Shown here: positions 45,210 through 64,000 of the stretch, in pieces
How the letters are laid out: each line of letters opens with the position of its first letter
How positions within the stretch are numbered: position 1 is the stretch's first letter
Sequence record: MN871444.1
DNA: 64,000 nucleotides
Strand: one strand, 5' to 3'
Position numbers and translations under genes: made by a program
The notes under the pieces: generated by a model
The model's input: only the letters and a program-made list of their open reading frames with translations
The model's database searches: none
Told to the model about the DNA's origin: nothing

Positions 45210-45232
45210 ACAAAATAAGGGGTTTTATCATT

Positions 45233-46069
45233 ATGGGAAATATCGAAAAATTCAGAATGGCGTTGCTTGGCAATATCGCTAAGCAAGTGAAACCACAACA
45301 GCCGGTGTTTAAAGTTAAACCCAACCGTCCACTGACCCACATCTGGAAAGAAACTGTTCCGGACCAGCGTATCGGCGGGTATTTTAAAAAGCTGCTCAGC
45401 GAAGAGGCGCTCTGGGTCACTATCGATGAAGAGACTTTCACCCTTCGCCCCGTTTTATTCGGGGAAATGTCCTTACAGTTAATTGACTACTTTAATTTCT
45501 TTCAACGGGCAAAAGAAGCGGTACGTCAGGGTACCGTTACTACGCCGGTTTATCTGCGGGGTGAAGCGCACGCAACTTCAGTGTATCGAAACATGCAAAT
45601 TACTCCGCTGCAAACTTCGTTCAACTATACCCACTGGTGGAACGCTAGTTGTGGGTTTGGTGATTGGAAAGAACAGCATTTTCGTCGGCGGGTATTCAAT
45701 GCAATTAACCGCGAACGGCAATGGTTAACCGGGCCCGTATTGGTTGCGCTGGACGACGCGATTCGGCATCTGGATGCGGCCAATATCGACGCCCCTGGGT
45801 TGATTGCTTATTTGTGTGACATTTCTGCCATCTACCATTATGCGCAAGCATCTTGCGATAATGCATTGTGGTTGCTGACGACTCGCGAATCCCTGAATCT
45901 GTCGGCAGCCATGTTAAGAGATGTGGTTTCACGGCATACCGTTCTTGAAGTTTGTAACTACAGTGTACGTAGCGATTATTCCATAGATACGTTAATTGAT
46001 ATTGAAAATATCGAGTTACTCTACCGTCAAGCTTCGCCGGTGTTCTCTCTACCTCACGGGCATAAATAA
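45233..46069 (+). CDS. hypothetical protein (278 aa)
   Basis: Long ORF with AAGGGG RBS. Confidence 0.7.
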   Translation: MGNIEKFRMALLGNIAKQVKPQQPVFKVKPNRPLTHIWKETVPDQRIGGYFKKLLSEEALWVTIDEETFTLRPVLFGEMSLQLIDYFNFFQRAKEAVRQGTVTTPVYLRGEAHATSVYRNMQITPLQTSFNYTHWWNASCGFGDWKEQHFRRRVFNAINRERQWLTGPVLVALDDAIRHLDAANIDAPGLIAYLCDISAIYHYAQASCDNALWLLTTRESLNLSAAMLRDVVSRHTVLEVCNYSVRSDYSIDTLIDIENIELLYRQASPVFSLPHGHK

Positions 46070-46360
46070 ATGACCCACGACCCCCTGCTGGAGATGCTTA
46101 TCCGAGCGGAGTTATCGGATATCATCAGCACCCTGAAACTCCATCTGCTGACGCATGACAAACCCGACATTGAAACCCTTAGGGAATCCCTGAGGGTGAT
46201 GTTGCCGCGCATGCAAACCACCACCTGCAGAAAAATAGTCGAAGATTGCATTGCCGCTAAAAACCCAATTACGTTATTGGAAATGATTTTGGTGTCGCAT
46301 ATGCAGTCCAAAACAACATCACCGAACACGCCGGTTGTAAACCGTAAGGGACGTAAATGA
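46070..46360 (+). CDS. hypothetical protein (96 aa)
   Basis: Abuts the upstream stop; ATGA overlap with the next gene. Confidence 0.65.
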   Translation: MTHDPLLEMLIRAELSDIISTLKLHLLTHDKPDIETLRESLRVMLPRMQTTTCRKIVEDCIAAKNPITLLEMILVSHMQSKTTSPNTPVVNRKGRK

Positions 46361-47082
46361 AATATGAAGAAACCGTGGTTGCTATGGATTGGGATGATAC
46401 TATCGTGGATACCACCCCAACCCTGGCAAATATGATTCACGTTAATACCGGCTGGCATCCCGGCGATGATGTTTATCTGAACAGCAACAACGACCGAGGG
46501 CATCTGGCCCCACTCCTGGCTTCAGGTGAGTTTATGGCATTAACTGAACTGCGCCCAGAACACGTGGGATTAATCGATTGGATGTATGCCATCAAAGAAA
46601 GATTCCCGGTGAGATTTGTGGTGGCTACTCACCGTGGTTATCACGCCGAGGCCGAGCGTCTGACCGCCGATAACGTCACACGTACCGGGTTACCATTTTC
46701 GGACATCATCTATATCGACCCCAAAAAACACGCAGATAAAACGGCTTATCTGTCCGAGATCTTCCCCAGGACGGTGTTAATCGATGACCGCCCGATGTTC
46801 GATGGGCACGGTCCACTACCTCCCAACGTCATTCTCTACAACCAGCCCTGGAACCAGCACATTGCTCCATTTAAAGATCGCTATCGGGTGACTAACAGCA
46901 TCCGCATGCGCACTGAGGTAGAGCGGTTTATTCGCATGACCTACCTCATTGAAGAAACGCTGAATGAACACAGCACGCTACCCTTAGCAGAAAAGTCGTT
47001 TAATGAATACGACTCTACCAGTTTATCTGCGACGGTACGGGCGCGCGTAGCCGGAGGTAAAATTAATGACCGACGCTTCTGA
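46357..47082 (+). CDS. HAD-superfamily 5'(3')-deoxyribonucleotidase-like phosphatase (241 aa)
   Basis: Motif I AMDWDDTIVD, motif II VATHRG, motif IV LIDDRP and C-terminal YNQPWN. Confidence 0.8.
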   Translation: MKYEETVVAMDWDDTIVDTTPTLANMIHVNTGWHPGDDVYLNSNNDRGHLAPLLASGEFMALTELRPEHVGLIDWMYAIKERFPVRFVVATHRGYHAEAERLTADNVTRTGLPFSDIIYIDPKKHADKTAYLSEIFPRTVLIDDRPMFDGHGPLPPNVILYNQPWNQHIAPFKDRYRVTNSIRMRTEVERFIRMTYLIEETLNEHSTLPLAEKSFNEYDSTSLSATVRARVAGGKINDRRF

Positions 47083-47428
47083 TTTGACCATCGTCCAAAA
47101 CATGGTAATTGAATCCTTGGGAAAATTACCAGGCATGGTTTATAAGGTAATCGAAACTTATAAACCAGAAGAAGTGGCTGCGGTAACTGAGCAGTTGCAG
47201 GGCCAGCTGCCATTAGCTTCGCTCGGTGATGTATTGCAATCCTATCTTCAAAAGGAATTGGGTGAAGATTATGCTGACTGGGTGAGGTGTGTGGCTGAAG
47301 AAGGTACGGTGGATATCGTGGTTATGCCGCCGGGCGACCAAATCGCAACAATGCCGCTGACTATCCTGGACGAGAAACTCGCCCGTGGGTGGTGCGTGGG
47401 GTTACTGCATTCAGAAGGTGAATCGTAA
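47066..47428 (+). CDS. hypothetical protein (120 aa)
   Basis: GGAGG RBS; overlaps the upstream gene. Confidence 0.7.
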   Translation: MTDASDLTIVQNMVIESLGKLPGMVYKVIETYKPEEVAAVTEQLQGQLPLASLGDVLQSYLQKELGEDYADWVRCVAEEGTVDIVVMPPGDQIATMPLTILDEKLARGWCVGLLHSEGES

Positions 47429-47895
47429 TGCGCCCATTGGAATTTGTCTACAAAGGGGTGAAACTCACCCTGGATACAAAGTCATTTAACCCAACTCAGC
47501 CATTCATTCTTTTGAATGATGAGGTGGAGGAAAGTTATTTGCTTAATGTAACCAATCTATCCGAAGAATGGGCGACAAAACCCGCAGTCATCCGTAAGCT
47601 GGGTAAGCTCGCATCACCTTACGGTGTCATCCAACTCATCGTTACTGGATTAACTAAACCCTGGAAATTAACTGGCCGTAAAGCTACGCTCCATGGCGTT
47701 GAGTTCCAGGAAGGGGTGTTTGACATTGGTAACGATGTTGTGGGCGCCTGGATGCCGGTAGGGGACGCTGAACAACAAGTCCCCGTCCAAACCTACATCG
47801 TTGATGTCAAACACCCCAGGCTGTATGGTAAGCTCCTGGGTCGTACCTTTGTCCACATCAAAACATCAGACGGTTTCCGATTCGTCTACGCCTAA
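47428..47895 (+). CDS. hypothetical protein (155 aa)
   Basis: TAATG coupling. Confidence 0.7.
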   Translation: MRPLEFVYKGVKLTLDTKSFNPTQPFILLNDEVEESYLLNVTNLSEEWATKPAVIRKLGKLASPYGVIQLIVTGLTKPWKLTGRKATLHGVEFQEGVFDIGNDVVGAWMPVGDAEQQVPVQTYIVDVKHPRLYGKLLGRTFVHIKTSDGFRFVYA

Positions 47896-47909
47896 CGTTG
47901 GGGGTACGT

Positions 47910-48269
47910 ATGGAGCTTGAACGTGTGGTTTACCACCCGGCTGGAATGATTGCTTATTATTCTGACGGTACGGTGGGTATACCAACCCAGGAAGATTTGG
48001 ATAACGCTGTCGGGGAGATTCTGCTTTATACCAAACATCGCGCTAAAAGAATTATTACGGACGTTTTAACTCACGGATACGATGAACTTAAATTTCGCAA
48101 CAATCCCACCAAGGATGAGTGTGGCGTTGTTGCGTTTCAGTTATTGTGGCATGCGCAAGACCACCTGAATGTGTTTCCCATTTTGTGGAAACCTTCTGGT
48201 GATAAACCATGGTACGAATGCCTGTATATGTCGGTCTGGGGAAATGGCTCTGATTTACGTCCGGTATAA
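47910..48269 (+). CDS. hypothetical protein (119 aa)
   Basis: GGGGG RBS before ATG 47910; ends at a terminator. Confidence 0.65.
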   Translation: MELERVVYHPAGMIAYYSDGTVGIPTQEDLDNAVGEILLYTKHRAKRIITDVLTHGYDELKFRNNPTKDECGVVAFQLLWHAQDHLNVFPILWKPSGDKPWYECLYMSVWGNGSDLRPV

Positions 48270-48271
48270 AA

Positions 48272-48301
48272 GGGAGAGGCTTCGGCCTCTCCCTTTTTTT
48301 A
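48272..48301. terminator. bidirectional intrinsic terminator
   Basis: AAAA-GGGAGAGGC-ttcg-GCCTCTCCC-TTTTTTT. Confidence 0.9.
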
Positions 48302-48359
48302 TGTTGTTTTTTTTTATTTATTCGGCGGTGGTTATTACGCCCCCCTTTTTTTTATGCTT

Positions 48360-50885
48360 TTATGCCAATGAGATAGTTGAGCGTGCTTCAACCCAGTCAG
48401 TGCCCAGAGTATTCGAACTCCCTGAGGTTAATCTATACCATCCGGCGATTACGTAGGTGTGGGTTAGGGTATTCGACCCTACCGTGATCGTTTGTGTCTT
48501 TATTGCTTTATCCAGATTTTTTGCGAAATAACCTGCCGGCCAATACCCAGTCGTAGGAACCGATGAGGTTGCCGACATGCCAGAAGCGTACTTTGTAGTC
48601 AAGTAAGTTGCGGACGTGGGATCGGAATCCTCCACTATAAAATCATCCGAGGTCATTTTTGGGATATACCTGACCCCTTTATTGTTGGTACTCCCCGCTA
48701 CAGTGAAATCATAGCCATCCGCCGGCTGACATAAATAAATATTGTTTTTTACAACACCCGTACCGCGGGTAGTTTCAGCACCGGTATTATTACGCATACC
48801 CCCTACGTCAGATACGCCAATAGCGCAGTTCCGAAATATATTATTTTTTGCAATAATTCCCGTGACATATGACCGACTAACCCCGGCTGGAACATCAGTA
48901 TTATTCCACCCGCCTCCAGAAGTTCGATAACTACTTTCTAAATACGGGTCTATGTCAAAAACATTGTCCGATACATTTAAAAATCCATAGGGTTGACCTA
49001 GTTTACTAGATGATGCAAAATTACCACCCGAGACATCCACTCCTGAAGTACCGAGGCGAATAAATTCGTTATCTTTAATAACAAGGTTATTAATAAACGT
49101 ACAATATTTTAAATTTATTCCTTTGTCTAACCCATAGAACAAATTGTCTTTTGCCACCAATCGATGTATTGCTGGAGTGGGGGTATACTGCCCAACCCTA
49201 GCTAATATTCCAGTCCCAGTGCGCATTGTGGACATTATCGGGTCTACCCATCCAGTAGGGCAAAATACTTTACCCAAACCCCATGATGAATATAGATTGG
49301 CGTCCGGTAACGTTCTAGTAAACTGGTTGCCGGAAATTCTTATATCTCTGATGCCAAATATTGGGGATGTTTTTGTGGTATTACCTGCACTCGCTAGGAA
49401 ATAGGTTTCTGGAAGGACAAAGGAATGTAATGCATAATCGAATTGGCCTGGGGGGACTGAGTTCGTTACTGCCACTTGTGGGTACGGTGAAATTAATATA
49501 CCTACGTTCCACAATGAGTCAGAACCTTGAGACGGGACGTTGGACCCCCCTGCGGCAAATACCGCGGGAGCCGGAATCATATCAGATATAAGGTTATCTT
49601 TTATATTGATTGCGGCCATATCGTTAGCACCTTCTGTACCACCACTCCAGCCAACCATAATCCCTAAATACTTGGTTCTATTCAATATGTTATTACTTAT
49701 ATTGGTGTACGTACCCCCCAAACAAGCGATACCGCAGGTATCAATCAATACATTATCAGTTATTACACATCCTCGATTGAGAGTTTGAGTGTACCCAACT
49801 AAATTAGATTTGTAGTCAGTTCCAGCGGCAATGGCGTTATCGCCACAATGCTCTATGTAATTTCCAGATACCACTGTGGAATGATTTCCACCTACTCGGA
49901 TGCCATCTCGCATCGAATTTTTTATAGTGCAGTTTTTTATTTCCGCCGACAAATTACTACCGGCCACAATACTGAATCCCCGACACCATAATACACTGAC
50001 GTTGGTTATGCTGACATTTTCGAAGTACTCAGCACGGATCGCCCCCTCAGTCCCTACAGTGGATGCATTGTAGTAGGTGCTGGTGTTAGTGCTATCATAG
50101 GCGAAGAAATTTCCTTCCACCCCAGTTATGGTAAAATCCCTTAACACGCAGTTTGCTGGTTTTGTCCCTGGATAATACAAAGAACCATAACTCATCATAC
50201 CACCCGCCCCGGCTTTGATATGAAAAACAGTCCTTCCTTCACCGGCCCCGATAATACAACCATAATGGTCAAATTGAGCATCAATCAGGTAGTGCCCAGC
50301 TGGGACATATAGTTGTTTATTTTGCAAATAAGCCGTTTTACAAGCGGTCTCCAATAATACTGACATGCCGAGTTGCAGAGAACCATTCTTAATATCGTCA
50401 TATTGGGTTGGGGTAATAAATTTGAAAAAACTTATCATATCCAATTCTGTTTTATGGATTACATTATCTAGTTCTGCCTGTACGGAATTTCCTTGCGTAC
50501 CCCCAAGAAAATTTGTTACTGTAGTGGTTATAAGTCCCGCCCCCAAACCCTCTTCACTTGAACGGAGGTTTTCGCGAAGCACTGAATCATTGCTGTATGC
50601 CCAGGCCCCAGAACCGATGCCACCGGTGGTGTCTGGCGTGCTTCCTGAGGGTACTGTTTTCGGGTAACTGCCGGTCCAAACCAAACGTTGGCCGCCATAA
50701 ACAATTTCTTCTTTTATAGACGTAATGGTAAAACCGACATCGAAAGATTTACTGGCGGTCAGGAAATTCGTCATTGGGATTTGATAATTACTCCCATCTT
50801 CGCTATACAGCAATGCCCCGGTGTTATAACCCAACCCGTAGGTCGGCAGGTCACTCAGGCGCTTTGCGATTACTCTACTGGTCAT
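48360..50885 (-). CDS. tailspike/depolymerase A (841 aa): anchor head, tailspike N-terminal domain and beta-helix body; currently expressed arm of switch 1
   Basis: GAGGT RBS before ATG 50885; KRLSDLPTY anchor; WTGSYPKTVPSGSTPDTTGGIGSGAW matches the Tail_spike_N-type motif; pectate-lyase-like repeats. Confidence 0.85.
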   Translation of the reverse strand: MTSRVIAKRLSDLPTYGLGYNTGALLYSEDGSNYQIPMTNFLTASKSFDVGFTITSIKEEIVYGGQRLVWTGSYPKTVPSGSTPDTTGGIGSGAWAYSNDSVLRENLRSSEEGLGAGLITTTVTNFLGGTQGNSVQAELDNVIHKTELDMISFFKFITPTQYDDIKNGSLQLGMSVLLETACKTAYLQNKQLYVPAGHYLIDAQFDHYGCIIGAGEGRTVFHIKAGAGGMMSYGSLYYPGTKPANCVLRDFTITGVEGNFFAYDSTNTSTYYNASTVGTEGAIRAEYFENVSITNVSVLWCRGFSIVAGSNLSAEIKNCTIKNSMRDGIRVGGNHSTVVSGNYIEHCGDNAIAAGTDYKSNLVGYTQTLNRGCVITDNVLIDTCGIACLGGTYTNISNNILNRTKYLGIMVGWSGGTEGANDMAAINIKDNLISDMIPAPAVFAAGGSNVPSQGSDSLWNVGILISPYPQVAVTNSVPPGQFDYALHSFVLPETYFLASAGNTTKTSPIFGIRDIRISGNQFTRTLPDANLYSSWGLGKVFCPTGWVDPIMSTMRTGTGILARVGQYTPTPAIHRLVAKDNLFYGLDKGINLKYCTFINNLVIKDNEFIRLGTSGVDVSGGNFASSSKLGQPYGFLNVSDNVFDIDPYLESSYRTSGGGWNNTDVPAGVSRSYVTGIIAKNNIFRNCAIGVSDVGGMRNNTGAETTRGTGVVKNNIYLCQPADGYDFTVAGSTNNKGVRYIPKMTSDDFIVEDSDPTSATYLTTKYASGMSATSSVPTTGYWPAGYFAKNLDKAIKTQTITVGSNTLTHTYVIAGWYRLTSGSSNTLGTDWVEARSTISLA
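50553..50578 (-). repeat. invertase crossover site A (hix/gix-like, core TC on the minus strand)
   Basis: Minus strand TTCGCGAAAACC-TC-CGTTCAAGTGAA; 18-bp exact inverted repeat with site B. Confidence 0.9.
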
Positions 50886-50909
50886 GTTGTTATACCTCAC
50901 GCAGTGGCG

Positions 50910-50940
50910 TCTTGTAAAAAATGATAAGCATAAAATGAGG
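50910..50940 (-). promoter_or_regulatory. 31-bp upstream element with TTTTATG (late-promoter-like), identical to 63595-63625
   Basis: CCTCATTTTATGCTTATCATTTTTTACAAGA on the minus strand upstream of tailspike A; TATG is the known phiKZ late promoter core. Confidence 0.75.
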
Positions 50941-50947
50941 TCGCACC

Positions 50948-52486
50948 GTGGTTCATTCAAACCTCCGTTCAAGTGATACTGGAAAAGGGGGTAGTTTAGT
51001 TAACACTATTATCGGGGTATCTGTGGGGGATTGGTTAGGCAATACCGTAATAACTCCAGACATGTTTTATACCTCTAATGATGCTGACTGGTCATCGGCT
51101 TTTTCTTTAGCCGCCGCCGCATGTACCAAATTAAAACTGCCCGTGACCTTATTACCTAGGACATATACTTTTAATAAGTCAGTAGATTTGACCATATTTA
51201 GTTATGGTGTTGTCTGCGATGCCTCCAGAAACAATAAGGTTATTTTTAAAGCAACGGATAATTCCACCAATGCTGAAGTTTTTGTGTCTATGAAAAACGT
51301 AGACCGTCGAAAAACAGGTGGATTTCTCATAGACGCCAATAATTTATTTGATGTCGGATTTGATACCACGTGGGATTTGACTGGCGGGCCTTCACTAATG
51401 ATGGTTTGGGAAAAAATACAGATTCAGGGATGGAGAACTATAGGGTGGCGTGCAAATAACAATAATGATGTTTGGAATAAAAATATTACCATTCTCGAGC
51501 CCGGGGCCGGCGTAATAGCAAATGCAGTTAGCTATTATAACCATAGTGCGGGAGGGCCGATTTCATTCGAAGGGTGTAGCTTCCAGGGAGGAAGAGTCCA
51601 AATTACCGCCCAACATATAAGTGCTACCTTTTGCGTGTTTAGGGGCATTGAAATAAAAACGGGAGGTTCTGGATGGAATACTTTTGCTGCGATGGGATGT
51701 CATTTTTTTAAAGATAGTTATTATAATGCATGCTTCACTTTCGCCGGTAACATTCAAGGGTTTACTGTGATTGGTGGGTTGGTTGAACCCACTGACGGTG
51801 GGGTGGTATTGCTGGGGCTGGGTACTGGTTATTTCAATTGCGGGCAATTGGAATTTATGAATACCAGAATTAGTTCCTATAACGCCACTGCACCTGCGGT
51901 GTTAGCCAGCGGAACTATGCTATCAGCTTACGGTAATACCACTATAAAAATAACGGGGGGCATTGCGGAACTGTCTTCTTATGACCCGACGACAATGGGT
52001 TGGGTAAACACCCTAGTCATAGATAAGGTCTTATTAAACCAATTAAACAACACCCCCATAACGCGTGTATTTTCCGGAACCACGTTACGTTACAATAAGC
52101 CAACGGTTGGAAACATCAGCGTCATTAATACCTCATCCACGGCATGTATTGTAACTGATTTACTAAACACGCTGACTACGACAAGTCGAAATTTTGGAAA
52201 TATTTCGGCCCTGGATGGAGCAAAAACAACCAGAAGTGGCGGGACAATAAAATTAGTCTATGCCGATGGCGGTGGGTACGCCGAATATAGATATGCACGT
52301 ACGGGCACCACAGCTGTAACTTTAACTTTAGTATCCGAAGCTTACGTAGACACTACAAGGCAATTATCCGTGTATAATTCCAGTTCTCAGTATGTTTATG
52401 TGGCTAATAGCCGAGCGGCCGGTTCAACTGGCGATTCCTGGACCCTACTAATATCGTTCACCGGCACCCTTGATTACATTCCATAA
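50948..52486 (+). CDS. headless tailspike body B (512 aa): alternative cassette of switch 1
   Basis: Lacks the anchor head; begins at site B in the same frame (SNLRSSD vs ENLRSSE); beta-helix-like sequence. Confidence 0.85.
   Translation: MVHSNLRSSDTGKGGSLVNTIIGVSVGDWLGNTVITPDMFYTSNDADWSSAFSLAAAACTKLKLPVTLLPRTYTFNKSVDLTIFSYGVVCDASRNNKVIFKATDNSTNAEVFVSMKNVDRRKTGGFLIDANNLFDVGFDTTWDLTGGPSLMMVWEKIQIQGWRTIGWRANNNNDVWNKNITILEPGAGVIANAVSYYNHSAGGPISFEGCSFQGGRVQITAQHISATFCVFRGIEIKTGGSGWNTFAAMGCHFFKDSYYNACFTFAGNIQGFTVIGGLVEPTDGGVVLLGLGTGYFNCGQLEFMNTRISSYNATAPAVLASGTMLSAYGNTTIKITGGIAELSSYDPTTMGWVNTLVIDKVLLNQLNNTPITRVFSGTTLRYNKPTVGNISVINTSSTACIVTDLLNTLTTTSRNFGNISALDGAKTTRSGGTIKLVYADGGGYAEYRYARTGTTAVTLTLVSEAYVDTTRQLSVYNSSSQYVYVANSRAAGSTGDSWTLLISFTGTLDYIP
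50952..50977 (+). repeat. invertase crossover site B (core TC)
   Basis: TTCATTCAAACC-TC-CGTTCAAGTGAT; inverted relative to site A. Confidence 0.9.
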
Positions 52487-52493
52487 TTAATGT

Positions 52494-52529
52494 AACATAT
52501 TGGGAGGGCAAAACCCCTCCCTTTTATGC
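52494..52529 (+). terminator. intrinsic terminator, dispersed repeat family member
   Basis: AACATATT-GGGAGGG-caaaa-CCCTCCC-TTTTATGCC. Confidence 0.85.
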
Positions 52530-52572
52530 CCGCGTTCTTTATCGTATGCACTTTTATAAAGGAGGGCACCAC

Positions 52573-53136
52573 ATGGGCTTTACCCCTAATTTCACCCTGT
52601 CCTCATATTACGTGGTTAATATTGGACTACCGTCTTCAGAATTGGTATTTGGATTAATTAACCACGATAACCATTCCACATTTGCCGCCTCTGATGTGTT
52701 CTTTGATATCCCTGCGAGCACTGCTCCGGGTAGTTTAAGAAACACGCAAATCACGTTATATCGTCAACCGCCATACGACTACGATTCGATGGTAGTGACT
52801 TATGACAGGTTAGACCTCGATGAGGCGTTAGAAAAACATCTGCCTATTATTTTGTCCCTTGAAGAAACCGATCTCAACCTCACCGATCTCATTCCTTATT
52901 TCAATAATACTTATAACCTATCTTTAATTGACGGTGAGGTTTTAGGAGGGGTTATCGATACGGTTGCAGATACAAATGCGTTCACCATCTCCGATTCCAG
53001 TTTAGCGTGGCGAGGCACCGTAGATTTTACAGCCATTGCTCTAGGCCATTCTTTAATGGTTGATGACACTGGGGAATACATCACGGTCGGAAATGGCCTT
53101 TTATTGGAAATCACGCCACCACCAACAAGTGAGTAA
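52573..53136 (+). CDS. tailspike adaptor-like paralog 1 (187 aa)
   Basis: LPSSELVFGLINHDN, YDRLDL and TISDSSLAW motifs shared with three paralogs; GGAGG RBS. Confidence 0.7.
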   Translation: MGFTPNFTLSSYYVVNIGLPSSELVFGLINHDNHSTFAASDVFFDIPASTAPGSLRNTQITLYRQPPYDYDSMVVTYDRLDLDEALEKHLPIILSLEETDLNLTDLIPYFNNTYNLSLIDGEVLGGVIDTVADTNAFTISDSSLAWRGTVDFTAIALGHSLMVDDTGEYITVGNGLLLEITPPPTSE

Positions 53137-53142
53137 AATAAC

Positions 53143-54918
53143 ATGGCACAGACAGTTGCGAAGAAAGGCCTGGCCGCACTCCCTGATTTGGGGAGCGTTA
53201 TGGGTGAAAACGGCTACTTTCATTATAATGAAGATGGGGTAGACTATCGTTTTCCTGTGGCTCTTTTAAGTCAAATTTCCGTACTTGCTGCCGCTACTGG
53301 CGCAAAAAGCATCGGCCTAGATTTAACAACCGTGTGGAACGTCCTTTCTGGGCGCACCCGCAATTTCTTTGAATTCCTCAGCGATGATAAAATCATTGCA
53401 GTGAAAGCCGGTGAAGATGTGGATGTTACCACAGAACTTCAAGCGGCAATGGATGCGAATTGTGCTATCAAAATACCTGACGGTAGCTATTTCGTGACGC
53501 AAGCTATCACCACGTCCATCAATTCTGGTTTGGTGGGTGATGGTCCTCGCAACTGCGTGATTGATAACCGCGGTATTGACCATCTTTTCAAATTCCCTTC
53601 TGGGTATAACCGTGGGTGGAAAGTGTGGTGTGGGTTTAAAATCAAATCCAGCAATCAGGCGGCACTCAAGAAATATGCCTTTTATTTCATGGGCTCCGCT
53701 GCGGCAGGGTATTTGGATTATGCTGCTTCCCATTGGTTCCAATTAATTGAGTTTGATGGTACCGGCATGGGTGGAGGTTGGTATCTCCAGGATTGTTTCC
53801 GGGTAACCATCCGGGACTGCGGCGCAACGGCACACGGCAACCCGTTCTATATTGCAGGTTCAGTAGTTCAACTTACCGTCGATAACTACGTCAACAATGG
53901 TGATAACGCCCCCGTCATGGACGTCGGGTCATACGGCGTATATATGACCAATAAAACGTACACCGATGGTAATGGCGTCAAGTCTCCAGAAGGCATCAAT
54001 TTTACTCATTGTAAATTTGTTAAACAGGCTGTTGGCGCTTATACGGTCGGATTATTTATCAACTTTTCTAAATGTGAATTTGATTATTGTTGGCAATACG
54101 GTGGGTATTATCGTGGTGGTAGTCAGGTCACGTTCGATATGTGCTATGTGGGTGCCCAAGCAAATCGACCTAATGATTTTGTGGGGTTCATGATCCCAGC
54201 ACAGGCGACGGGTGTTGCAGAAAAAGTTGTAGTTCATAAATGCACCATTAACATGCAAACGAACACAAATGCCAATGCCGCGAATTATGTCTCTAAAGGT
54301 ATCCAAATAGGTAATTCAACCGTGAACCCGATTGCGGCAGATATTGTCAGCAATACTTTCCGGGGAACAGGATACACCATCGGGATTCATGTGGCCCGGG
54401 GACTTGGCATTAAACTGGATGCCAATGCATTCCTATATACCGGCGTGGATATCCAGGTAGACGAATGTCGCACCTTATGGATGGCCAACAATACCACCAG
54501 TATTGATGATTCCGGTAATCCGCGCGGCACTTACAGCGTAACCACTACTGACAACAGTGCCGAATGGTTTATTGTTGGGAATGACGGAACGTTCACTACT
54601 AAAAGTATCGTCAACCCTGCCCGATGCATCATAATGAATCGGTATTGGACGCCCTACGTTACCAGAACTGCATGGTCACCGATAGCAGCAGTCAGTACGA
54701 GTATTTCTGCTGGCGGTACTTATTCATTCAGTATGGCCGCTACAGCGGATGCCAACGCCGTTTATTCTTTAGCGGGCATAACCGTTGCGGGGTTGCTTTG
54801 GAGTGTAGTTTATATTAACACCACCTCTGTTCGCGTGACCTTTTTTAATCCGACTGCCTCTACGATTACACTCAATGCTTCGTTGCGTGTGAAGACAGAG
54901 TGGCCTCCAGTGGGGTGA
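53143..54918 (+). CDS. tailspike/depolymerase C (591 aa)
   Basis: KKGLAALPDL...HYNEDGVDYRFP anchor; DVTTELQAAMDA...IPDGSY pectate-lyase-type start; beta-helix repeats. Confidence 0.8.
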   Translation: MAQTVAKKGLAALPDLGSVMGENGYFHYNEDGVDYRFPVALLSQISVLAAATGAKSIGLDLTTVWNVLSGRTRNFFEFLSDDKIIAVKAGEDVDVTTELQAAMDANCAIKIPDGSYFVTQAITTSINSGLVGDGPRNCVIDNRGIDHLFKFPSGYNRGWKVWCGFKIKSSNQAALKKYAFYFMGSAAAGYLDYAASHWFQLIEFDGTGMGGGWYLQDCFRVTIRDCGATAHGNPFYIAGSVVQLTVDNYVNNGDNAPVMDVGSYGVYMTNKTYTDGNGVKSPEGINFTHCKFVKQAVGAYTVGLFINFSKCEFDYCWQYGGYYRGGSQVTFDMCYVGAQANRPNDFVGFMIPAQATGVAEKVVVHKCTINMQTNTNANAANYVSKGIQIGNSTVNPIAADIVSNTFRGTGYTIGIHVARGLGIKLDANAFLYTGVDIQVDECRTLWMANNTTSIDDSGNPRGTYSVTTTDNSAEWFIVGNDGTFTTKSIVNPARCIIMNRYWTPYVTRTAWSPIAAVSTSISAGGTYSFSMAATADANAVYSLAGITVAGLLWSVVYINTTSVRVTFFNPTASTITLNASLRVKTEWPPVG

Positions 54919-54922
54919 TATA

Positions 54923-55444
54923 ATGGCGACGTATGTTCCCGATATTTCGTTGACTTCCGATGAGCTGGTATACCAGCTCATCAATAACGACAACGGTACT
55001 TATTATGATGCGGCCCATCTAACTCTGGGTGTTCCGTCAGTCAATACCACTGATTACTCAGACAAAAATACGCGCATTACTGTATCACATCCAAAATACG
55101 GTGCAATAGATGGCACCCTCCTTTATTACAATCGAATGGACATACAGAAGGTGTTTGATAATACCTTCCCTTTATTCGTTTGTTTAAATGGGGAATTAAC
55201 CGCCAGTGAGTTAGGTGCGTATTTCCAATCCACCTATGGTGTTGGCCTAGGTAGTGTTGACATATCTCCGACTATCATTTCTGGGACCACCAACACGGAG
55301 ATAGTTTTCACCATCTCCGATTCCAGTTTAGCCTGGTATGGCCAAACCCCAATGATGGTGGTTAGTAAAAGCCATTATTTTTACGGTACTCCGGACACTC
55401 TGGGGTATTACGTTTTATCTGATGGTAGTCTGTTGACTGCTTAA
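54923..55444 (+). CDS. tailspike adaptor-like paralog 2 (173 aa)
   Basis: LTSDELVYQLINNDN, YNRMDI and TISDSSLAW motifs. Confidence 0.7.
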   Translation: MATYVPDISLTSDELVYQLINNDNGTYYDAAHLTLGVPSVNTTDYSDKNTRITVSHPKYGAIDGTLLYYNRMDIQKVFDNTFPLFVCLNGELTASELGAYFQSTYGVGLGSVDISPTIISGTTNTEIVFTISDSSLAWYGQTPMMVVSKSHYFYGTPDTLGYYVLSDGSLLTA

Positions 55445-55455
55445 TGAGGGCTATC

Positions 55456-56115
55456 ATGGCAGGATTTTACATCGTTGATTTGTCCTTGCCATCTGATGAG
55501 ATGGTGTTAGGGTTAATCAACAATGACAATGAATTAGCATTGCGGATGGACGAAGTTAATTTGGGGGTAGCTCAAGTTAATACCGACGTCATAAGGCACC
55601 CCCGAGACACTACCATGCTCGTGACTAACGGGAAATACGCCAGAGATACATTACGGGTCTACTACGACCGACTCAGTATTGAGGATGTTATTTCCATGAA
55701 ATATCCCATCATTGTTCGGGGCGTGGCTGATGGTAATGTATCTGATCTACTGACCTACGTCAATTCTGAATATGGGTTGGGTTTGGTGCCAGCAGATATC
55801 GTCGATGCCGCATTAAGCGATTTGACTGAGGAAATTGCCAGCGCGGAACTGGACATGCAGTCGACTAACCGCGCTTGGTTGGGGTCGGTACCTATCCTCA
55901 TTCTCGGTGATGGCATGACTGTATTACGTCAGGAAGACGATGATGGCATCATGTTGTTATTTGATGATGATACTTACATCGCTGTAGGTAGTCCAGCATT
56001 CGCTATTGAGAACATGGTCACTTTGGCGGAAGGGCAGTCCGTATTAGTCACCCAGGCGGTAAACCCTATCACCGCGACAGATGGTACCTACTATCTGCTG
56101 CGTAGCGCAACGTAA
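55456..56115 (+). CDS. tailspike adaptor-like paralog 3 (219 aa)
   Basis: LPSDEMVLGLINNDN, YDRLSI and RAWLG motifs; GAGG RBS before ATG 55456. Confidence 0.7.
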   Translation: MAGFYIVDLSLPSDEMVLGLINNDNELALRMDEVNLGVAQVNTDVIRHPRDTTMLVTNGKYARDTLRVYYDRLSIEDVISMKYPIIVRGVADGNVSDLLTYVNSEYGLGLVPADIVDAALSDLTEEIASAELDMQSTNRAWLGSVPILILGDGMTVLRQEDDDGIMLLFDDDTYIAVGSPAFAIENMVTLAEGQSVLVTQAVNPITATDGTYYLLRSAT

Positions 56116-56129
56116 TAAGGAGAGCCGTT

Positions 56130-58332: not shown

Positions 58333-58370
58333 AACAACATATCGGGAGGGCGAAAGCCCTCCCTTTTGTG
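58333..58370 (+). terminator. intrinsic terminator, dispersed repeat family member
   Basis: AACAACATATC-GGGAGGGC-gaaa-GCCCTCCC-TTTTGTG. Confidence 0.85.
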
Positions 58371-58422
58371 TGAAACTGTACGGCCCATTTTATGCTGATA
58401 AAATTTTATTGAGGGGTCTATT

Positions 58423-60894: not shown

Positions 60895-61413
60895 ATGCCA
60901 GCAAGTATGTATGTAGTGGATACGTCCCTACCCTCTGTTGATTTGGTCTACGGGCTTATCAACAACGATAACAACACGGTTTATAGTAAATCAACACTCA
61001 ACCTGGCTACGCCAGAAACAAATACCAATCCCGCGATTGATCGTAATAGTAAAATCCTGGCTTCGAACATCAAATACAGTAACAACACTTTGATGTTGTA
61101 TTACGATAGATTGGATATTGCTGACGTATTGCGCATGGAGTTACCCATCATTTTGTCGAATGTAACCGAAACCACGGTAGACCAAATGATGTGGTTTTTT
61201 AACTCCACGTACAAGATGGGATTGACCAAAGCTGAAATTAATGCGTCGGCAGTTGATTTAACCAATAACACCACTACGTGGACAATTGCGGATAATTCAA
61301 TGGCGTGGGTGGGAAATCTACCATTAACCATTTTACCATCCGGGTATGGCCTTTTGATTGATGAAACAAACAATCAATTGTTGGATGAAGATGGGTCATA
61401 TTTAATTTTATAA
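60895..61413 (+). CDS. tailspike adaptor-like paralog 4 (172 aa)
   Basis: LPSVDLVYGLINNDN, YDRLDI and TIADNSMAW motifs; AAGGAG RBS. Confidence 0.7.
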   Translation: MPASMYVVDTSLPSVDLVYGLINNDNNTVYSKSTLNLATPETNTNPAIDRNSKILASNIKYSNNTLMLYYDRLDIADVLRMELPIILSNVTETTVDQMMWFFNSTYKMGLTKAEINASAVDLTNNTTTWTIADNSMAWVGNLPLTILPSGYGLLIDETNNQLLDEDGSYLIL

Positions 61414-61417
61414 ATAG

Positions 61418-61456
61418 GGCATAAAAGGGAGGGCAAAAGCCCTCCCAATATGTTGA
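61418..61456. terminator. bidirectional terminator, dispersed repeat family member
   Basis: GGCATAAAA-GGGAGGGC-aaaa-GCCCTCCC-AATATGTTGA between convergent genes. Confidence 0.85.
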
Positions 61457-63001
61457 TTACACTGCGGTTCCCGTTGCATCAACCCATCCAGTATTTGTGG
61501 CATTTCGCCAAATGGGTTTATTCAAGGTAGTATCAAAATATTGATCCCCGGAATTAGAAAATGCATTCGGCCGCAACGCGGTAGTCCCAACCGCCACTGT
61601 CTGTGGCCCTACTTCATACCAGATGCCATTATACCGCCAAAATTCATATGTGTTGCCTAATCTACATGTTTTTCTTCCATCTGAAGTACATCCTTTTACT
61701 ACAAACGTCGAACTCCTTACTAGAGTAATATTTGCGTTTCCGTAGATTATAACACGTTGGCCCTTGACCCCGTTCAGTAAATCAGTTATATCCGTAGCCA
61801 CGGTATCTGTAGGTATGTATGTTTTCACACCTTCAACATTTGGTGTGCTGCCAGTACCTCGCTGATATCCATCGTACATAACGTGCAAAACCCCATTAAA
61901 CAAAGAATCAGAGATCGCTGAGGTTATATGCCCGGTGGATAGAAATGAAGCTATTCGGGGCTTTAAACTCATATCGGATTGATCCGCGGAAGAAATCCAT
62001 TCAATACCGTATTTGTGGGTTCCGTCAGCACGGCAGTTACTCAACTGACTGCGATTATCTAAAACAAATCCGCTATAAGTTCCACTCGCCCCATTTGAAT
62101 TATTAAGGGCATGACAATTACTCATTATGGCTGAGCCATAAAAACCATGACCATAATTTAAATCAGCGCGGCAATTGGTTAATTTATGCATGGCTCCCGT
62201 GGCTGACACACATATCCCAATTTCCGATAACTCCCCCTCCAAATTGACGGCGTAGTTATTTGCGCCACCCAGCAATATACCGCAAAGATACAATGATGTT
62301 GATTGTATCGCAGTAATGCCAGTATTACCCTGAATACGTTCAATAAAATTATCGGCGCCATTGAACACAAACACCCCGGTTCTTGCCGATCTCGAACGAT
62401 TTAATAAACAGTTTGTTCCAGAAAGATCTGAAAATTTTCCAATCAGAGCATTTGTAACCAATGCCTCATCGGAAAAATAATCCCACTTACATGCAGTGAC
62501 AATCCAGTCGTTTGACCCCGCACGAAGATTGACCCCACCACCAGGCAATGCTAACCCACCGCCTTTAAAATCAATCCCGATAATCCCACCACAGTCGCCA
62601 CCACCAGTAGGGGTATCTATAACCCATCCTGAAGTTGCCGGCGTAAACTGAGTACCGTACTTAGTTATGGACGCCCCGAAGGATAATATCCCACGCACAG
62701 CACCAAAGGTACAACCAATATGGCAGACGTTAGATTTATTTATAAAATTTAATTTATAAACCCCTCTAGGCCAGTAAATCCCACCACCACCTAACGAACT
62801 GACATAATCTACCAAGGCTTGCGCCGCTGCAGAATCGTCAGTTATGCCATCCCCAATAATACCATAATCCTTAGCATTAAAAACATCGCTTAAACGCGCC
62901 GCCAATGTTCTGGTAACTGATGGGCCATTTTGCGCGGCAAAAGACACCATGCTTGCGCCATCACTTGAACCCAGGTTTGAGGGAATATATGTCGACACCA
63001 A
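61457..63001 (-). CDS. headless tailspike body F (514 aa): alternative cassette of switch 2
   Basis: No anchor head; starts across site C (SNLGSSD); NAKDYGIIGDGITDDSAAAQA pectate-lyase-3 start; C-terminal GTTALRP...YFDTTLNKPIW...WVDATG motif. Confidence 0.85.
   Translation of the reverse strand: MVSTYIPSNLGSSDGASMVSFAAQNGPSVTRTLAARLSDVFNAKDYGIIGDGITDDSAAAQALVDYVSSLGGGGIYWPRGVYKLNFINKSNVCHIGCTFGAVRGILSFGASITKYGTQFTPATSGWVIDTPTGGGDCGGIIGIDFKGGGLALPGGGVNLRAGSNDWIVTACKWDYFSDEALVTNALIGKFSDLSGTNCLLNRSRSARTGVFVFNGADNFIERIQGNTGITAIQSTSLYLCGILLGGANNYAVNLEGELSEIGICVSATGAMHKLTNCRADLNYGHGFYGSAIMSNCHALNNSNGASGTYSGFVLDNRSQLSNCRADGTHKYGIEWISSADQSDMSLKPRIASFLSTGHITSAISDSLFNGVLHVMYDGYQRGTGSTPNVEGVKTYIPTDTVATDITDLLNGVKGQRVIIYGNANITLVRSSTFVVKGCTSDGRKTCRLGNTYEFWRYNGIWYEVGPQTVAVGTTALRPNAFSNSGDQYFDTTLNKPIWRNATNTGWVDATGTAV
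62960..62985 (-). repeat. invertase crossover site C (hix/gix-like, core TG on the minus strand)
   Basis: Minus strand TTCCCTCAAACC-TG-GGTTCAAGTGAT; 20-bp exact inverted repeat with site D. Confidence 0.92.
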
Positions 63002-63018
63002 CCCTCAAGGACATAAAA

Positions 63019-63570
63019 ATGATCTACGGTTATGCCCGAGTTTCTACTCAACATCAGGATACTACACTACAACTTATTGCGCTTCAGGCAGCCGGTTGCG
63101 ATGAAATTCGCGAAGAAAAAGCGTCTGGTAGAAGTAGAAACAGACCCGTATTGAAGAAACTGCTAACCGATCTTCAATCCGGCGATGAATTAGTATTGTG
63201 GAAAATAGACAGGATGGGTAGGAATGTATTACATGCCTTAACCTGGTTGGCTGAGCTGCAGGATAAGAATGTAAACCTCAGGTCAATCACCGACGCTATC
63301 GATATGCGTACTGCTTCTGGCCGTTATAGTTTTCGCAATATTTTGAATGCCGCACAGTACGAATCGGACGTAAATAGCGAAAGAACCTTGGCTGGACTAG
63401 CTGCAGCCAGAGCACAAGGTAGGGTGGGTGGAAGAAAACCAACAATGACCGAACCCGTTTTGGAGAAAGCACGGGATTTAATAAATGCCGGAAATAATTA
63501 CCGTGAAGTAGCTGAAGTCATCGGAGTGACCACAAAAACGATATACAAATATTTTCCAGTCAATTCATAA
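63019..63570 (+). CDS. serine DNA invertase, Hin/Gin/Pin family (183 aa)
   Basis: YARVST catalytic Ser9, LVLWKIDRMGR, ERTLAGLAAARAQGRVGGR and C-terminal HTH VIGVTTKTIYKYFP; AAGGA RBS before ATG 63019. Confidence 0.95.
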   Translation: MIYGYARVSTQHQDTTLQLIALQAAGCDEIREEKASGRSRNRPVLKKLLTDLQSGDELVLWKIDRMGRNVLHALTWLAELQDKNVNLRSITDAIDMRTASGRYSFRNILNAAQYESDVNSERTLAGLAAARAQGRVGGRKPTMTEPVLEKARDLINAGNNYREVAEVIGVTTKTIYKYFPVNS

Positions 63571-63634: not shown

Positions 63635-64000
63635 ATGGCCAACAGAGCGATTACGAAGAAAATTAGTGCTTTGCCGACCTACGCACTGAACAACAATAAC
63701 GGCAATTTACTGTATAGTGAGGGGGGTGCAAATTACCAATTTCCGTTGAGTAATATTGCCCTTCTTTCAAACCTGGGTTCAAGTGAAGTGGGTAAAGGGG
63801 CGAGTCTGATAGGGACATCAGACGGTAGCAATTTACAACAAATTGCAACAGTAGTAAGTGACCAACTTATAACCAACCCACAAATTGTTGCTGGCGACAA
63901 CATGTCCGTTTTAGACCGAATCAAAGTCAAAGGCCAGTATGACATCAACCCGGCACCTCAGGAACCCCAAGCCGCAGTAGGTATTACTTTTGGAGGGCAG
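63635..64000 (+). CDS. tailspike G, 5' part (runs off the window); currently expressed arm of switch 2; not in the ORF track
   Basis: GAGGGG RBS; manual translation MANRAITKKISALPTYALNNNNGNLLYSEGGANYQFPLSNIALLSNLGSSEVGKGASLIG... is open to the window end. Confidence 0.9.
   Translation, partial: MANRAITKKISALPTYALNNNNGNLLYSEGGANYQFPLSNIALLSNLGSSEVGKGASLIGTSDGSNLQQIATVVSDQLITNPQIVAGDNMSVLDRIKVKGQYDINPAPQEPQAAVGITFGGQ
63762..63787 (+). repeat. invertase crossover site D (core TG)
   Basis: TTCTTTCAAACC-TG-GGTTCAAGTGAA; left arm is 10/12 identical to the hixL arm TTCTTGAAAACC. Confidence 0.92.

What the first reader, a model, noticed from the sequence alone, without database searches (positions are those of the whole stretch)
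48360..52486. Switch 1: orphan 400-bp invertible segment with no recombinase, 12 kb from the enzyme
AAACCTCCGTTCAAGTGA occurs at 50959-50976 (+) and inverted at 50554-50571. The segment between them holds the promoter element and the first roughly 107 codons of spike A (anchor plus tailspike N-terminal domain). The 512-aa plus-strand ORF has no head of its own and starts at the site in the matching frame (SNLRSSDTGKGG vs ENLRSSEEGLGA). The only candidate enzyme in the window is the invertase at 63019, which would act in trans.
Basis: partly seen in the sequence, partly recalled or inferred. Interest (0 to 1): 0.88.

Follow-up and report, generated by a model that had tools for sequence, protein, structure and literature searches.

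The report
Invertible tailspike switch, remote invertase
A 269-kb Klebsiella jumbo phage carries a 400-bp flip-flop DNA segment that hooks one shared tailspike "head" onto either of two different enzyme bodies, apparently driven by a single invertase gene 12 kb away that also runs a second, separately keyed switch; it is a new layout of the classical Mu/P1 host-range switch.

Summary
The window is Serratia phage KpGz_1 (host K. pneumoniae), bases 62001-126000. The exact 18-mer lies inverted at 50554-50571 and 50959-50976, against 0.07 matches expected by chance. It is the centre of a 26-bp imperfect palindrome. The 387 bp between the arms hold a promoter-like element and the first 104 codons of spike A, including the Tail_spike_N domain. 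Cassette B (509 codons) opens at the site in the same frame and has a stop 6 codons upstream. B is 90% identical in protein to a headless cassette in phage KpHz_2, with dN/dS about 0.02. In another relative, a B-type body is fused to this head exactly at the site. A metagenomic relative has collinear flanks and both sites exact, but its segment is inverted. The same contig carries the invertase, 14 kb away. The whole KpGz_1 genome has four sites and one serine invertase. The A/B sites (centre TCC) and C/D sites (TGG) differ in the crossover core, which should keep the two switches separate. Catalysis by this invertase at A/B is inferred, not shown. I rate it a new variant of a known kind, with moderately high interest.

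The parts
48360..50885 (-). Spike A as assembled (841 aa): the head (aa 1-104, with Tail_spike_N at aa 43-96) joined to a right-handed beta-helix body. This is the expressed state in this record.
50553..50578 (-). Left 26-bp recombination site of switch 1. It contains the exact 18-mer at 50554-50571, with the inferred 2-bp crossover core at 50565-50566. It sits at the head/body junction of spike A.
   Evidence: dyad symmetry read from the sequence
50572..50958 (.). Invertible segment between the two 18-mers (387 bp). It holds the head coding part (50572-50885, minus strand), an RBS and a promoter-like element.
   Evidence: found inverted relative to collinear flanks in L042/L043
50910..50940 (-). 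Promoter-like element containing TTTTATGC. It is 100% identical, in reverse complement, to 63595-63625 upstream of the spike C head, and similar to 58381-58427 upstream of a fixed spike.
   Evidence: (I4, I12, D2)
50952..50977 (+). Right 26-bp recombination site of switch 1. It contains the exact 18-mer at 50959-50976, with the inferred core at 50964-50965.
50957..52486 (+). Silent cassette B: 509 codons plus stop, a headless tailspike body that opens at the site in the head's frame.
48268..48297 (.). Symmetric G+C hairpin with A and T runs on either side, 63 nt beyond the spike A stop; likely a two-way terminator.
52502..52521 (+). Terminator-like hairpin 16 nt after the cassette B stop, so B has its own 3' end signal.
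63019..63570 (+). Serine DNA invertase (183 aa, catalytic Ser9). It lies inside the second invertible segment and is the only one in the genome.
62960..62985 (-). Left 26-bp site of switch 2, with centre TGG.
63762..63787 (+). Right 26-bp site of switch 2, with centre TGG.
61457..62980 (-). Silent cassette D of switch 2: 507 codons, headless, in frame with the site.
63635..64000 (+). Spike C: a 44-codon head inside switch 2, joined to a body that runs off the window.

Best explanation
Switch 1 is a working site-specific inversion switch for a tailspike, the capsule-degrading receptor-binding protein. Two 26-bp imperfectly palindromic sites lie in inverted orientation around a ~400-bp segment. 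The segment carries a promoter-like element, an RBS and the constant N-terminal 'head' of the spike (virion anchor plus Tail_spike_N domain). In the orientation in this record, the head reads leftwards into body A. After inversion it reads rightwards, in frame, into body B. One attachment position on the virion can therefore carry either of two enzymes. The catalyst is most likely the single Gin/Pin-like serine invertase at 63019-63570. It sits inside a second switch of the same design (C/D) and acts on switch 1 from 12 kb away. The two switches use the same half-sites but differ at the centre (TCC vs TGG). Serine invertases cut with a 2-bp stagger at the site centre and cannot ligate mismatched cores. 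A/B sites should therefore recombine only with A/B sites and C/D sites only with C/D sites. That gives 2 x 2 independent spike combinations in KpGz_1 and 3 x 3 in KpHz_2. Shown: the anatomy, the frames, selection on the silent cassette, both orientations among relatives, and co-occurrence with the invertase. Inferred: which enzyme acts, where the crossover falls, insulation by the core, promoter function, and when and how fast the segment flips.
For: Exact sites, far above chance. All 11 sites in KpGz_1, KpHz_2 and Eowyn are followed in one frame by 507-1079 open codons. Headless cassettes have a stop 6-14 codons upstream. Cassette B vs KpHz_2 cassette X: 509 codons, no gaps, 90% aa identity, pS 0.72, pN 0.054, dN/dS ~0.02, although both are headless as assembled. 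Homology between B and X begins at the first base of the site. P0001 (613 aa) is this head (about 95% identical) joined to a B-type body (90% identical) at the same junction. The head (>=95% identity) occurs on at least 11 different bodies. Inversion: in ERZ24875813 NODE_86 (L042; also Logan L043) the flanks align plus/plus. Window 50552-50977 aligns to L042 10334-9907 on the minus strand at 92% identity. Both TCC sites there are exact, the head is joined to the right-hand body and the left cassette is headless. That contig carries the invertase P0146 about 14 kb away. KpGz_1 as a whole has only four sites with <=2 mismatches and one serine recombinase. The invertase family is active in nature: L050 and L051 encode identical invertase proteins and have ~99% identical flanks, yet the 827-bp invertase segment is inverted with its ends at the sites. 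The invertase aligns to Mu Gin over residues 1-181 without gaps, E 5e-45. Core rule: a 2-bp stagger at the site centre, and one core base change blocks ligation of recombinants (PMC4817059). Cassette B models as a beta-rich protein, and its best PDB matches are phage tailspikes and depolymerases.
Against: No read-level or within-population evidence that KpGz_1 itself flips. Both GenBank genomes with the switch (KpGz_1, KpHz_2) are in the A orientation. L042 has different bodies, so its opposite orientation is a comparison between species, not two states of one clone. Hin-family invertases normally need a Fis-bound enhancer in cis, natively about 100 bp from a site (PMC3798978). No enhancer was identified near A/B. 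The invertase departs from residues that paper names as Fis contacts: it has Lys, Asp and Thr at its positions 150, 153 and 50 (Gin numbering; Hin Gln151, Arg154 and basic residue 51). Members of the genus are described as obligately lytic and nucleus-forming (PMC13757433), so access to host factors is uncertain. Eowyn keeps one exact TCC site with no partner and no invertase in the 35 kb examined, so an exact site alone does not prove use. The first 34 codons of B are variable, and an in-frame ATG at codon 36 is conserved. Translation of B on its own is therefore not strictly excluded.
Confidence: 0.78

Rival explanations
1. Frozen relic. The A/B locus was once a switch but no longer inverts in KpGz_1. 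Cassette B is a silent leftover, and the orientation differences among relatives are old events.
For: Both GenBank genomes are in the same orientation. Several relatives clearly have frozen, single-site versions in either orientation. Eowyn keeps an exact but unpaired site.
Against: Frozen relatives show decayed sites with 1-2 mismatches, whereas both KpGz_1 arms are exact. B has no stop or indel in 509 codons, and dN/dS is ~0.02 against a homologue at near-saturated synonymous divergence. The invertase is intact and its family has flipped the C/D segment between ~99% identical genomes.
Confidence: 0.1
2. Inversion happens, but another activity catalyses it: a second phage recombinase of another class, a host Pin/Hin-like invertase, or homologous recombination across the 18-29-bp repeat.
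For: The invertase lies 12 kb away and no enhancer was found near A/B. Only serine recombinases were searched for genome-wide; tyrosine recombinases and others were not screened. Enterobacterial hosts often carry Pin-like invertases 60-70% identical to this one.
Against: The A/B sites share both half-sites with the C/D sites that flank the invertase gene. Paired exact TCC sites occur in the three genomes shown to carry the invertase and in none of the three shown to lack it at that locus. Homologous recombination would not explain the dyad-symmetric 26-bp architecture, nor why homology between cassettes starts exactly at the site.
Confidence: 0.07
3. There is no switch. The inverted repeat is only a conserved coding motif (N-L-R-S-S) shared by two divergently transcribed paralogous spikes. 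B is translated on its own, from GTG 50948 (GAGG 9 nt upstream) or from the ATG at codon 36, as a free or separately anchored enzyme.
For: A GTG with a GAGG 9 nt upstream lies 3 codons before the site. An internal ATG is conserved. The motif is protein-coding in every copy.
Against: The motif could be encoded in thousands of ways, yet all 10 sites in the two phage genomes are identical at 15 of 18 bases and differ only in the central triplet. The KpHz_2 homologue has no start codon before codon 36. No promoter-like element faces B. The segment bounded by the sites is physically inverted in L042. B-type bodies are fused to N-terminal anchor domains in all full-length relatives.
Confidence: 0.05

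Closest known systems
Tail-fibre host-range switches of phage Mu (G segment/Gin), P1 (C segment/Cin), e14 (Pin)
   Same: All use a small serine invertase; here it aligns to Mu Gin over residues 1-181 without gaps, E 5e-45. Short dyad-symmetric sites lie in inverted orientation inside the receptor-binding gene, at the border between its constant and variable parts. Alternative C-terminal receptor-binding parts are fused in frame, giving phage progeny with different adsorption specificity.
   Different: Here the flipped piece is the small constant part (promoter plus N-terminal head, ~400 bp), while the variable bodies stay fixed outside. One enzyme serves two separate loci 12 kb apart, and one of them has no enzyme gene of its own. 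The two loci carry different site centres. The switched proteins are tailspike/depolymerase bodies, not fibres. The phage belongs to a group described as lytic, nucleus-forming jumbo phages rather than temperate ones (PMC13757433). The arrangement of the classical systems is given from established knowledge, not tested here.
Salmonella Hin / H segment (flagellar phase variation)
   Same: An invertible segment carries the invertase gene and an outward-facing promoter between two 26-bp sites (Johnson and Simon 1985, as cited in PMC3798978). This resembles switch 2 (C/D) in the window. Switch 1 likewise flips a promoter.
   Different: Hin turns one operon on or off. Here the flipped segment also carries the 5' coding part and chooses between two gene bodies. 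Switch 1 has no enzyme gene inside it. Hin's enhancer lies ~100 bp from a site, and none was identified for switch 1.
Multiple-inversion systems (Min of plasmid p15B; R64 shufflon)
   Same: In KpHz_2 each site class has three sites and three cassettes, in nested inverted and direct orientation. Successive inversions would bring any one of the three bodies to the head.
   Different: KpGz_1 has only two sites per class. The shufflon uses a tyrosine recombinase. In these classical systems the sites cluster in one locus with one site type. This comparison is from established knowledge.
Global promoter invertase of Bacteroides fragilis (Mpi)
   Same: One serine invertase is thought to flip several short promoter-bearing segments at distant loci.
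   Different: Mpi acts on a bacterial chromosome and flips promoters only, with no in-frame protein fusion. No sequence relationship was tested here. This is a likeness in how the system is organised, drawn from established knowledge.

Membership tests
Hin/Gin/Cin/Pin-type serine DNA invertase systems | Small serine recombinase: N-terminal catalytic domain with the nucleophilic serine near residue 9-10, and a C-terminal helix-turn-helix | tested here: met
   Pfam Resolvase 3.6e-36 plus HTH_7. phrog_125 'DNA invertase' 7e-65. Gapless alignment to Mu Gin (4m6f, 3uj3) over 1-181, E 5e-45, with Ser9 aligned. Ser9 is invariant in 124 homologues.
Hin/Gin/Cin/Pin-type serine DNA invertase systems | Two ~26-bp imperfectly dyad-symmetric sites in inverted orientation with identical central core bases | tested here: met
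   The 26-bp frames are 50553-50578 and 50952-50977. The half-sites match each other at 7-8 of 12 positions around a central dinucleotide (read). The arms are identical over 18 bp including the centre. The 26-bp length and 2-bp stagger come from PMC3798978 and PMC4817059.
Hin/Gin/Cin/Pin-type serine DNA invertase systems | The invertase gene lies next to or inside the segment it inverts | tested here: not met
   For switch 1 the nearest recombinase gene is 12,043 bp away. For switch 2 the gene is inside the segment.
Hin/Gin/Cin/Pin-type serine DNA invertase systems | Dependence on a Fis-bound recombinational enhancer in cis | tested here: inconclusive
   No enhancer could be identified from sequence. 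PMC3798978 names these positions as conserved in Fis-dependent invertases: Hin 47, 48, 51, 151, 154, 155. In Gin numbering the phage enzyme has K46, K47, T50, K150, D153, L154, so three of six depart. Position 106 is Arg, as in all 117 Pin-like homologues.
Hin/Gin/Cin/Pin-type serine DNA invertase systems | The segment is actually found in both orientations | tested here: met
   Switch 1: window and KpHz_2 versus L042/L043, with both sites intact. Switch 2: L050 versus L051 at ~99% identity. These are comparisons between genomes, not within one population.
Phage receptor-binding-protein switches by inversion (Mu G / P1 C type) | Alternative C-terminal receptor-binding parts joined in frame to one constant N-terminal part | tested here: met
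   All sites have the same frame. Headless cassettes have 507-667 open codons. The head plus B-type fusion exists as a real gene in a relative.
Phage receptor-binding-protein switches by inversion (Mu G / P1 C type) | The variable parts lie inside the invertible segment and the constant part outside | tested here: not met
   The reverse holds here: the constant head and promoter-like element are inside (50572-50958) and bodies A and B are outside.
Multiple-inversion systems (Min / shufflon type) | Three or more crossover sites giving more than two arrangements | tested here: not met
   KpGz_1 has exactly two sites of each class in 269 kb. KpHz_2 has three of each.

The most novel reading that the evidence does not exclude
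One invertase runs two mutually insulated switches through two site classes that differ only in the crossover core. It does so during purely lytic growth of a nucleus-forming jumbo phage, possibly without the host Fis/enhancer machinery. Each burst would then release a combinatorial mix of virions: 4 spike sets in KpGz_1 and 9 in KpHz_2. That would amount to programmed bet-hedging on capsule type by a virulent phage.
Probability: 0.3. Interest if true: 0.8.

Novelty: new variant of a known kind. Interest (0 to 1): 0.64.

Why it matters
Inversion switches for phage host range are textbook material for the temperate phages Mu and P1. Four full-text searches of the held library found no paper describing one in a jumbo phage or for capsule-specific tailspikes. 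If the switch is active, a 'clonal' stock of such a Klebsiella phage is a mixture of particles with different depolymerase sets. That would affect how genomes of these phages are annotated, because headless cassettes are real genes. It would affect how host-range and capsule-type data are read, and how spike complements are counted. The design, one enzyme with two site classes kept apart by the core bases, is also a compact natural example of orthogonal recombination sites. The comparative series from intact switches to frozen and decayed ones shows how such switches are gained and lost.

Tried and rejected
(1) I scanned IMG/VR for AAACCNNNGTTCAAGTGA. It gave 31 single hits, none homologous to the window by blastn, so they are chance or distant; only L007 has a similar spike junction motif, and I did not follow it up. 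(2) The closest named invertases in the phage collection (phi80 pinL, mEp237, HK225, ~62% identity) looked like possible comparators for site anatomy. In the two records opened, phi80 and mEp237, the annotation shows no invertible segment. In phi80 the only nearby tail gene is an annotated pseudogene fragment, and the annotated 'IR3' is a plain hairpin. They were no use as site comparators. (3) The sigma-70 promoter scan of 48200-52700 found no more than the shuffles (12 vs 11.0). The promoter call therefore rests on the phage's own repeated element. (4) dN/dS on only the first 34 codons of B was uninformative: this is a variable linker with 13 non-synonymous and 3 synonymous codon differences. 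(5) The AlphaFold model of B was of modest quality (pLDDT 62, pTM 0.41), so the tailspike matches (TM 0.2-0.3) are weak support only. (6) I found no within-sample evidence for both states; assemblies give one state each. (7) I did not screen the genome for tyrosine or other recombinases, because no suitable tool route existed for ~300 unannotated ORFs. The family comparison rests only on properties stated in PMC3798978 and PMC4817059 and on the window's own sequence.


Full report
WHERE THE WINDOW COMES FROM. The window is identical to Serratia phage KpGz_1, MN871444.1, bases 62001-126000. This is an unannotated 269,351-bp record whose stated host is Klebsiella pneumoniae. The only relatives in the phage collection are KpHz_2 (MN871445.1, fetched as L001) and Klebsiella phage vB_KvM-Eowyn (NC_070650.1, fetched as L002). 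A recent genome announcement describes a member of the genus Eowynvirus as an apparently obligately lytic jumbo myovirus with complex tail fibres, a nuclear-shell protein and PhuZ (PMC13757433). Eowyn itself was reported to encode seven putative depolymerases (PMC8006926). Neither paper mentions an invertase.

CHECK OF THE OBSERVATION. The 18-mer AAACCTCCGTTCAAGTGA is exact at 50554-50571 (minus strand) and 50959-50976 (plus strand). Allowing three mismatches adds only the two copies at 62961-62978 and 63769-63786, which read TGG instead of TCC at the centre. Chance expectation is 0.07 matches. The repeat finder extends the switch 1 arms to 29 nt (I5).

In its 26-bp frame each site is an imperfect palindrome. 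A variable outer half begins with TTC and ends with AAACC, then comes a central dinucleotide, and then a constant half whose reverse complement again begins with TTC (TGG sites) or ATC/TTC (the two TCC sites) and ends with AACC (TGG sites) or AACG (TCC sites). I read this. The frames are 50553-50578 and 50952-50977 for switch 1, and 62960-62985 and 63762-63787 for switch 2.

ANATOMY OF SWITCH 1. Spike A starts at ATG 50885 on the minus strand. 104 codons precede the codon that enters the site, and Pfam Tail_spike_N covers aa 43-96. A beta-helix body follows, down to 48360.

The 73 nt between this ATG and the right-hand site hold an RBS and a 31-nt stretch (50910-50940). That stretch is 100% identical, in reverse complement, to 63595-63625 just upstream of the head of spike C, and is similar to the stretch upstream of the fixed spike gene at 58423 (I4, I12, D2). 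Its TTTTATGC core occurs 35 times in the KpGz_1 genome against about 8 expected, about 20 of them directly after a G+C hairpin between genes. I therefore read it as the phage's own promoter or terminator-promoter element. That reading is an inference. A sigma-70 scan gave nothing above shuffles.

To the right of the segment, the plus-strand reading frame is closed by a stop 6 codons before the site. It then stays open for 509 codons in the same frame as the head. Cassette B ends 16 nt before a terminator-like hairpin at 52502-52521.

THE SAME RULE HOLDS AT EVERY SITE. In KpGz_1, KpHz_2 and Eowyn there are eleven sites in all. Each is followed, in one and the same frame, by 507-1079 open codons. 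The six headless cassettes each have a stop 6-14 codons upstream.

KpHz_2 has three TCC sites (L001 7504 plus, 11368 minus, 11773 plus) and three TGG sites (21888 minus, 26906 minus, 27713 plus). That gives three bodies per head, in a nested arrangement like a multiple-inversion system.

IS CASSETTE B A LIVE GENE? B has no Pfam or PHROG match, but four lines of evidence say it is live.
- It is homologous over its whole length to KpHz_2 cassette X, which sits at a different place (left of that phage's spike A body). The nucleotide homology begins at the first base of the site: window 50959 aligns to L001 7504.
- Over 509 codons there are no gaps or stops, 90% amino-acid identity, pS 0.72, pN 0.054 and dN/dS about 0.02. 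This is strong purifying selection on a sequence with no head in either assembled genome.
- In Logan assemblies, a 613-aa protein (P0001) has the spike A head (76% identity over the first 156 residues; about 95% over the head itself) fused at this junction to a body 90% identical to B. B-type bodies also occur behind unrelated N-terminal domains (P0002-P0006).
- An AlphaFold model of B is of modest quality (pLDDT 62). It is beta-rich, and its best PDB matches are phage tailspikes and capsule depolymerases.
One caveat: the first 34 codons are a variable linker, and an in-frame ATG at codon 36 is conserved. Independent translation is unlikely but not excluded.

DOES THE SEGMENT INVERT? The head, at 95% identity or more, is found on at least eleven different bodies. 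I fetched the contigs for several of them. Orientation below is given relative to the conserved flanking genes: a 119-123-aa gene on the left and a DUF7941 gene on the right.
- Head-bearing gene antiparallel to the flanks: KpGz_1, KpHz_2, Eowyn, L039/L040 and L054.
- Head-bearing gene parallel to the flanks: L041, L042/L043, L044 and L045/L046.

The decisive case is ENA ERZ24875813 NODE_86 (L042; independently Logan ERR13599000, L043). Its flanks align plus/plus with the window (44001-48321 and 52529-56300). Window 50552-50977 aligns to L042 10334-9907 on the minus strand at 92% identity. Both TCC sites there are exact (9908-9925 minus, 10315-10332 plus). The head is joined to the right-hand body (1012 codons), and the left cassette (465 codons) is headless. 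The inverted block ends at the two 26-bp sites.

Contigs with a single TCC-type site carry 1-2 mismatches in it (L039/40, L041, L044, L045/46). Eowyn is the exception, with one exact site.

WHICH ENZYME? The ORF at 63019-63570 is a 183-aa serine invertase. It has Resolvase and HTH_7 domains and matches phrog_125 at 7e-65. It aligns without gaps to Mu Gin residues 1-181 at E 5e-45, with Ser9 aligned. The closest named phage proteins are Pin-like invertases of phi80, mEp237 and HK225 at about 62% identity.

It lies inside switch 2, between the TGG sites, together with the promoter-like element and the 44-codon head of spike C. Cassette D (507 codons, minus strand) is the silent partner.

In the whole KpGz_1 genome, read in six separate pieces, there are only four sites with two or fewer mismatches and only one serine recombinase.

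The 90%-identity cluster of this invertase has eight members. One of them (P0146) is on the same 49-kb contig as the flipped switch 1 of NODE_86, about 14 kb from it.

Three genomes shown to carry the invertase (KpGz_1, KpHz_2, NODE_86) have 2-3 exact TCC sites. Three shown to lack it at the C/D locus (Eowyn, L044, L045) have one TCC-type site, decayed in two of them. Where the C/D sites of these genomes were examined (Eowyn and L044), they are decayed too.

The enzyme family is evidently active. L050 and L051 come from different samples and encode the identical invertase protein. Their flanks are about 99% identical, but the 827-bp invertase segment is in opposite orientation, with breakpoints at the sites. 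A body that is head-joined in L050 is headless in L051. In these genomes both TGG arms carry the same one-base variant, as expected if the arms exchange halves.

WHY TWO SITE CLASSES? The TCC and TGG sites differ only in the central triplet. By dyad symmetry, this triplet spans the second base of the central dinucleotide and the innermost base of the constant half-site. Serine invertases make 2-bp staggered breaks at the centre of the site, and a single base change in the core of one site prevents ligation in the recombinant configuration (PMC4817059).

I therefore infer that A/B sites cannot productively recombine with C/D sites. That would avoid 12-kb inversions or deletions across the structural genes between them and would make the two switches independent. 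In every genome examined, TCC sites go with the 104-codon head and TGG sites with the 44-codon head.

OPEN MECHANISTIC POINTS. Hin, Gin and Cin need a Fis-bound enhancer in cis, natively about 100 bp from a site and within or beside the invertase gene (PMC3798978). Switch 1 is 12 kb from that gene, and I could not identify an enhancer.

That paper names six positions as conserved in Fis-dependent invertases. The phage enzyme keeps three (K46, K47, L154 in Gin numbering) and departs at three (T50, K150, D153). Position 106 is Arg, as in all 117 Pin-like homologues examined. Fis dependence is therefore undecided.

If the phage replicates inside a protein shell, as described for the genus, access to host factors is a further open question. 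Timing and rate of inversion during lytic growth are unknown.

COMPARISON WITH KNOWN SYSTEMS. By enzyme, by site type and by the logic of in-frame alternative receptor-binding parts, this works like the Mu G, P1 C and e14 P switches. It differs in five ways.
- The constant head and the promoter-like element are what flips, and the variable bodies stay fixed.
- One enzyme gene serves two loci.
- The loci have different site centres.
- The proteins are tailspike bodies.
- The host phage is a jumbo phage of a lytic genus.
Switch 2 resembles the Hin segment, with enzyme and promoter inside. KpHz_2 resembles multiple-inversion systems. Four full-text searches found no description of such a switch in jumbo phages or for tailspikes.

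VERDICT. I rate it a new variant of a known kind.

SLIP TO REPORT.

Noticed in passing
window 52502-52529, 58344-58371, 61427-61454; genome-wide in L034-L038: There is a repeated intergenic element: a G+C hairpin of the GGGAGGGC...GCCCTCCC type followed by TTTTATGC. The 8-mer occurs 35 times in the KpGz_1 genome against about 8 expected, and about 20 of these follow such a hairpin. It is probably a combined terminator and phage-promoter signal.
   Followed up: partly
window 52546-53136, 54923-55444, 55444-56115, 60895-61413: Four DUF7941 / 'virion structural protein' paralogues are interleaved with the spike genes. They are conserved in order in all relatives. They may be adaptors that hold the individual spikes. 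Two of them share a 30-nt stretch at 97% identity (D8).
   Followed up: no
L001 7504-9031 (+), 19904-21905 (-): KpHz_2 has a third headless cassette for each site class, which gives 3 x 3 possible spike pairs. Its cassette at 7504 is the homologue of KpGz_1 cassette B but lies on the other side of the spike A body.
   Followed up: partly
L002 13273-13290, 19492-19547, 22974-23019: Eowyn has no invertase in the 35 kb examined. It has one exact TCC site inside its 1183-aa tail spike. It also has two decayed TGG-type relics, one of them beside a 44-aa 'hypothetical protein' that looks like the stump of a D-type cassette.
   Followed up: partly
L048 9944-9961 and 10753-10770; L050; L051: In three relatives both arms of switch 2 carry the same one-base variant of the 18-mer. 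The arms thus co-vary within a genome.
   Followed up: no
L050 vs L051: Two contigs from different samples encode identical invertase proteins and have ~99% identical flanks. The 827-bp invertase segment is in opposite orientation, and the cassette set on one side is different.
   Followed up: yes
P0007 (Klebsiella quasipneumoniae, 5.5-Mb contig): A chromosomal homologue of the B-type body (52% identity, 553 aa) has an N-terminus that looks like a signal peptide rather than a phage anchor. It is a bacterial or prophage copy of the same enzyme module.
   Followed up: no
window 62989-63570: One public gene call (JGI, P0024, 193 aa) starts the invertase at the upstream ATG 62989, only 4 nt from the 26-bp left site of switch 2. 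The alignment to Gin supports 63019 as the start.
   Followed up: partly
MN871444.1 / MN871445.1 records: Both records are titled 'Serratia phage', flagged UNVERIFIED_ORG and carry no annotation, yet give Klebsiella pneumoniae as host and sea water as source. As a result the switch cassettes and the invertase are not annotated in these two records.
   Followed up: no
L007 6347-6364 (IMG/VR 3300011613_000018): An unrelated viral contig has an exact TGG-type 18-mer that encodes a similar spike junction motif. This may be a distant user of the same site type.
   Followed up: no
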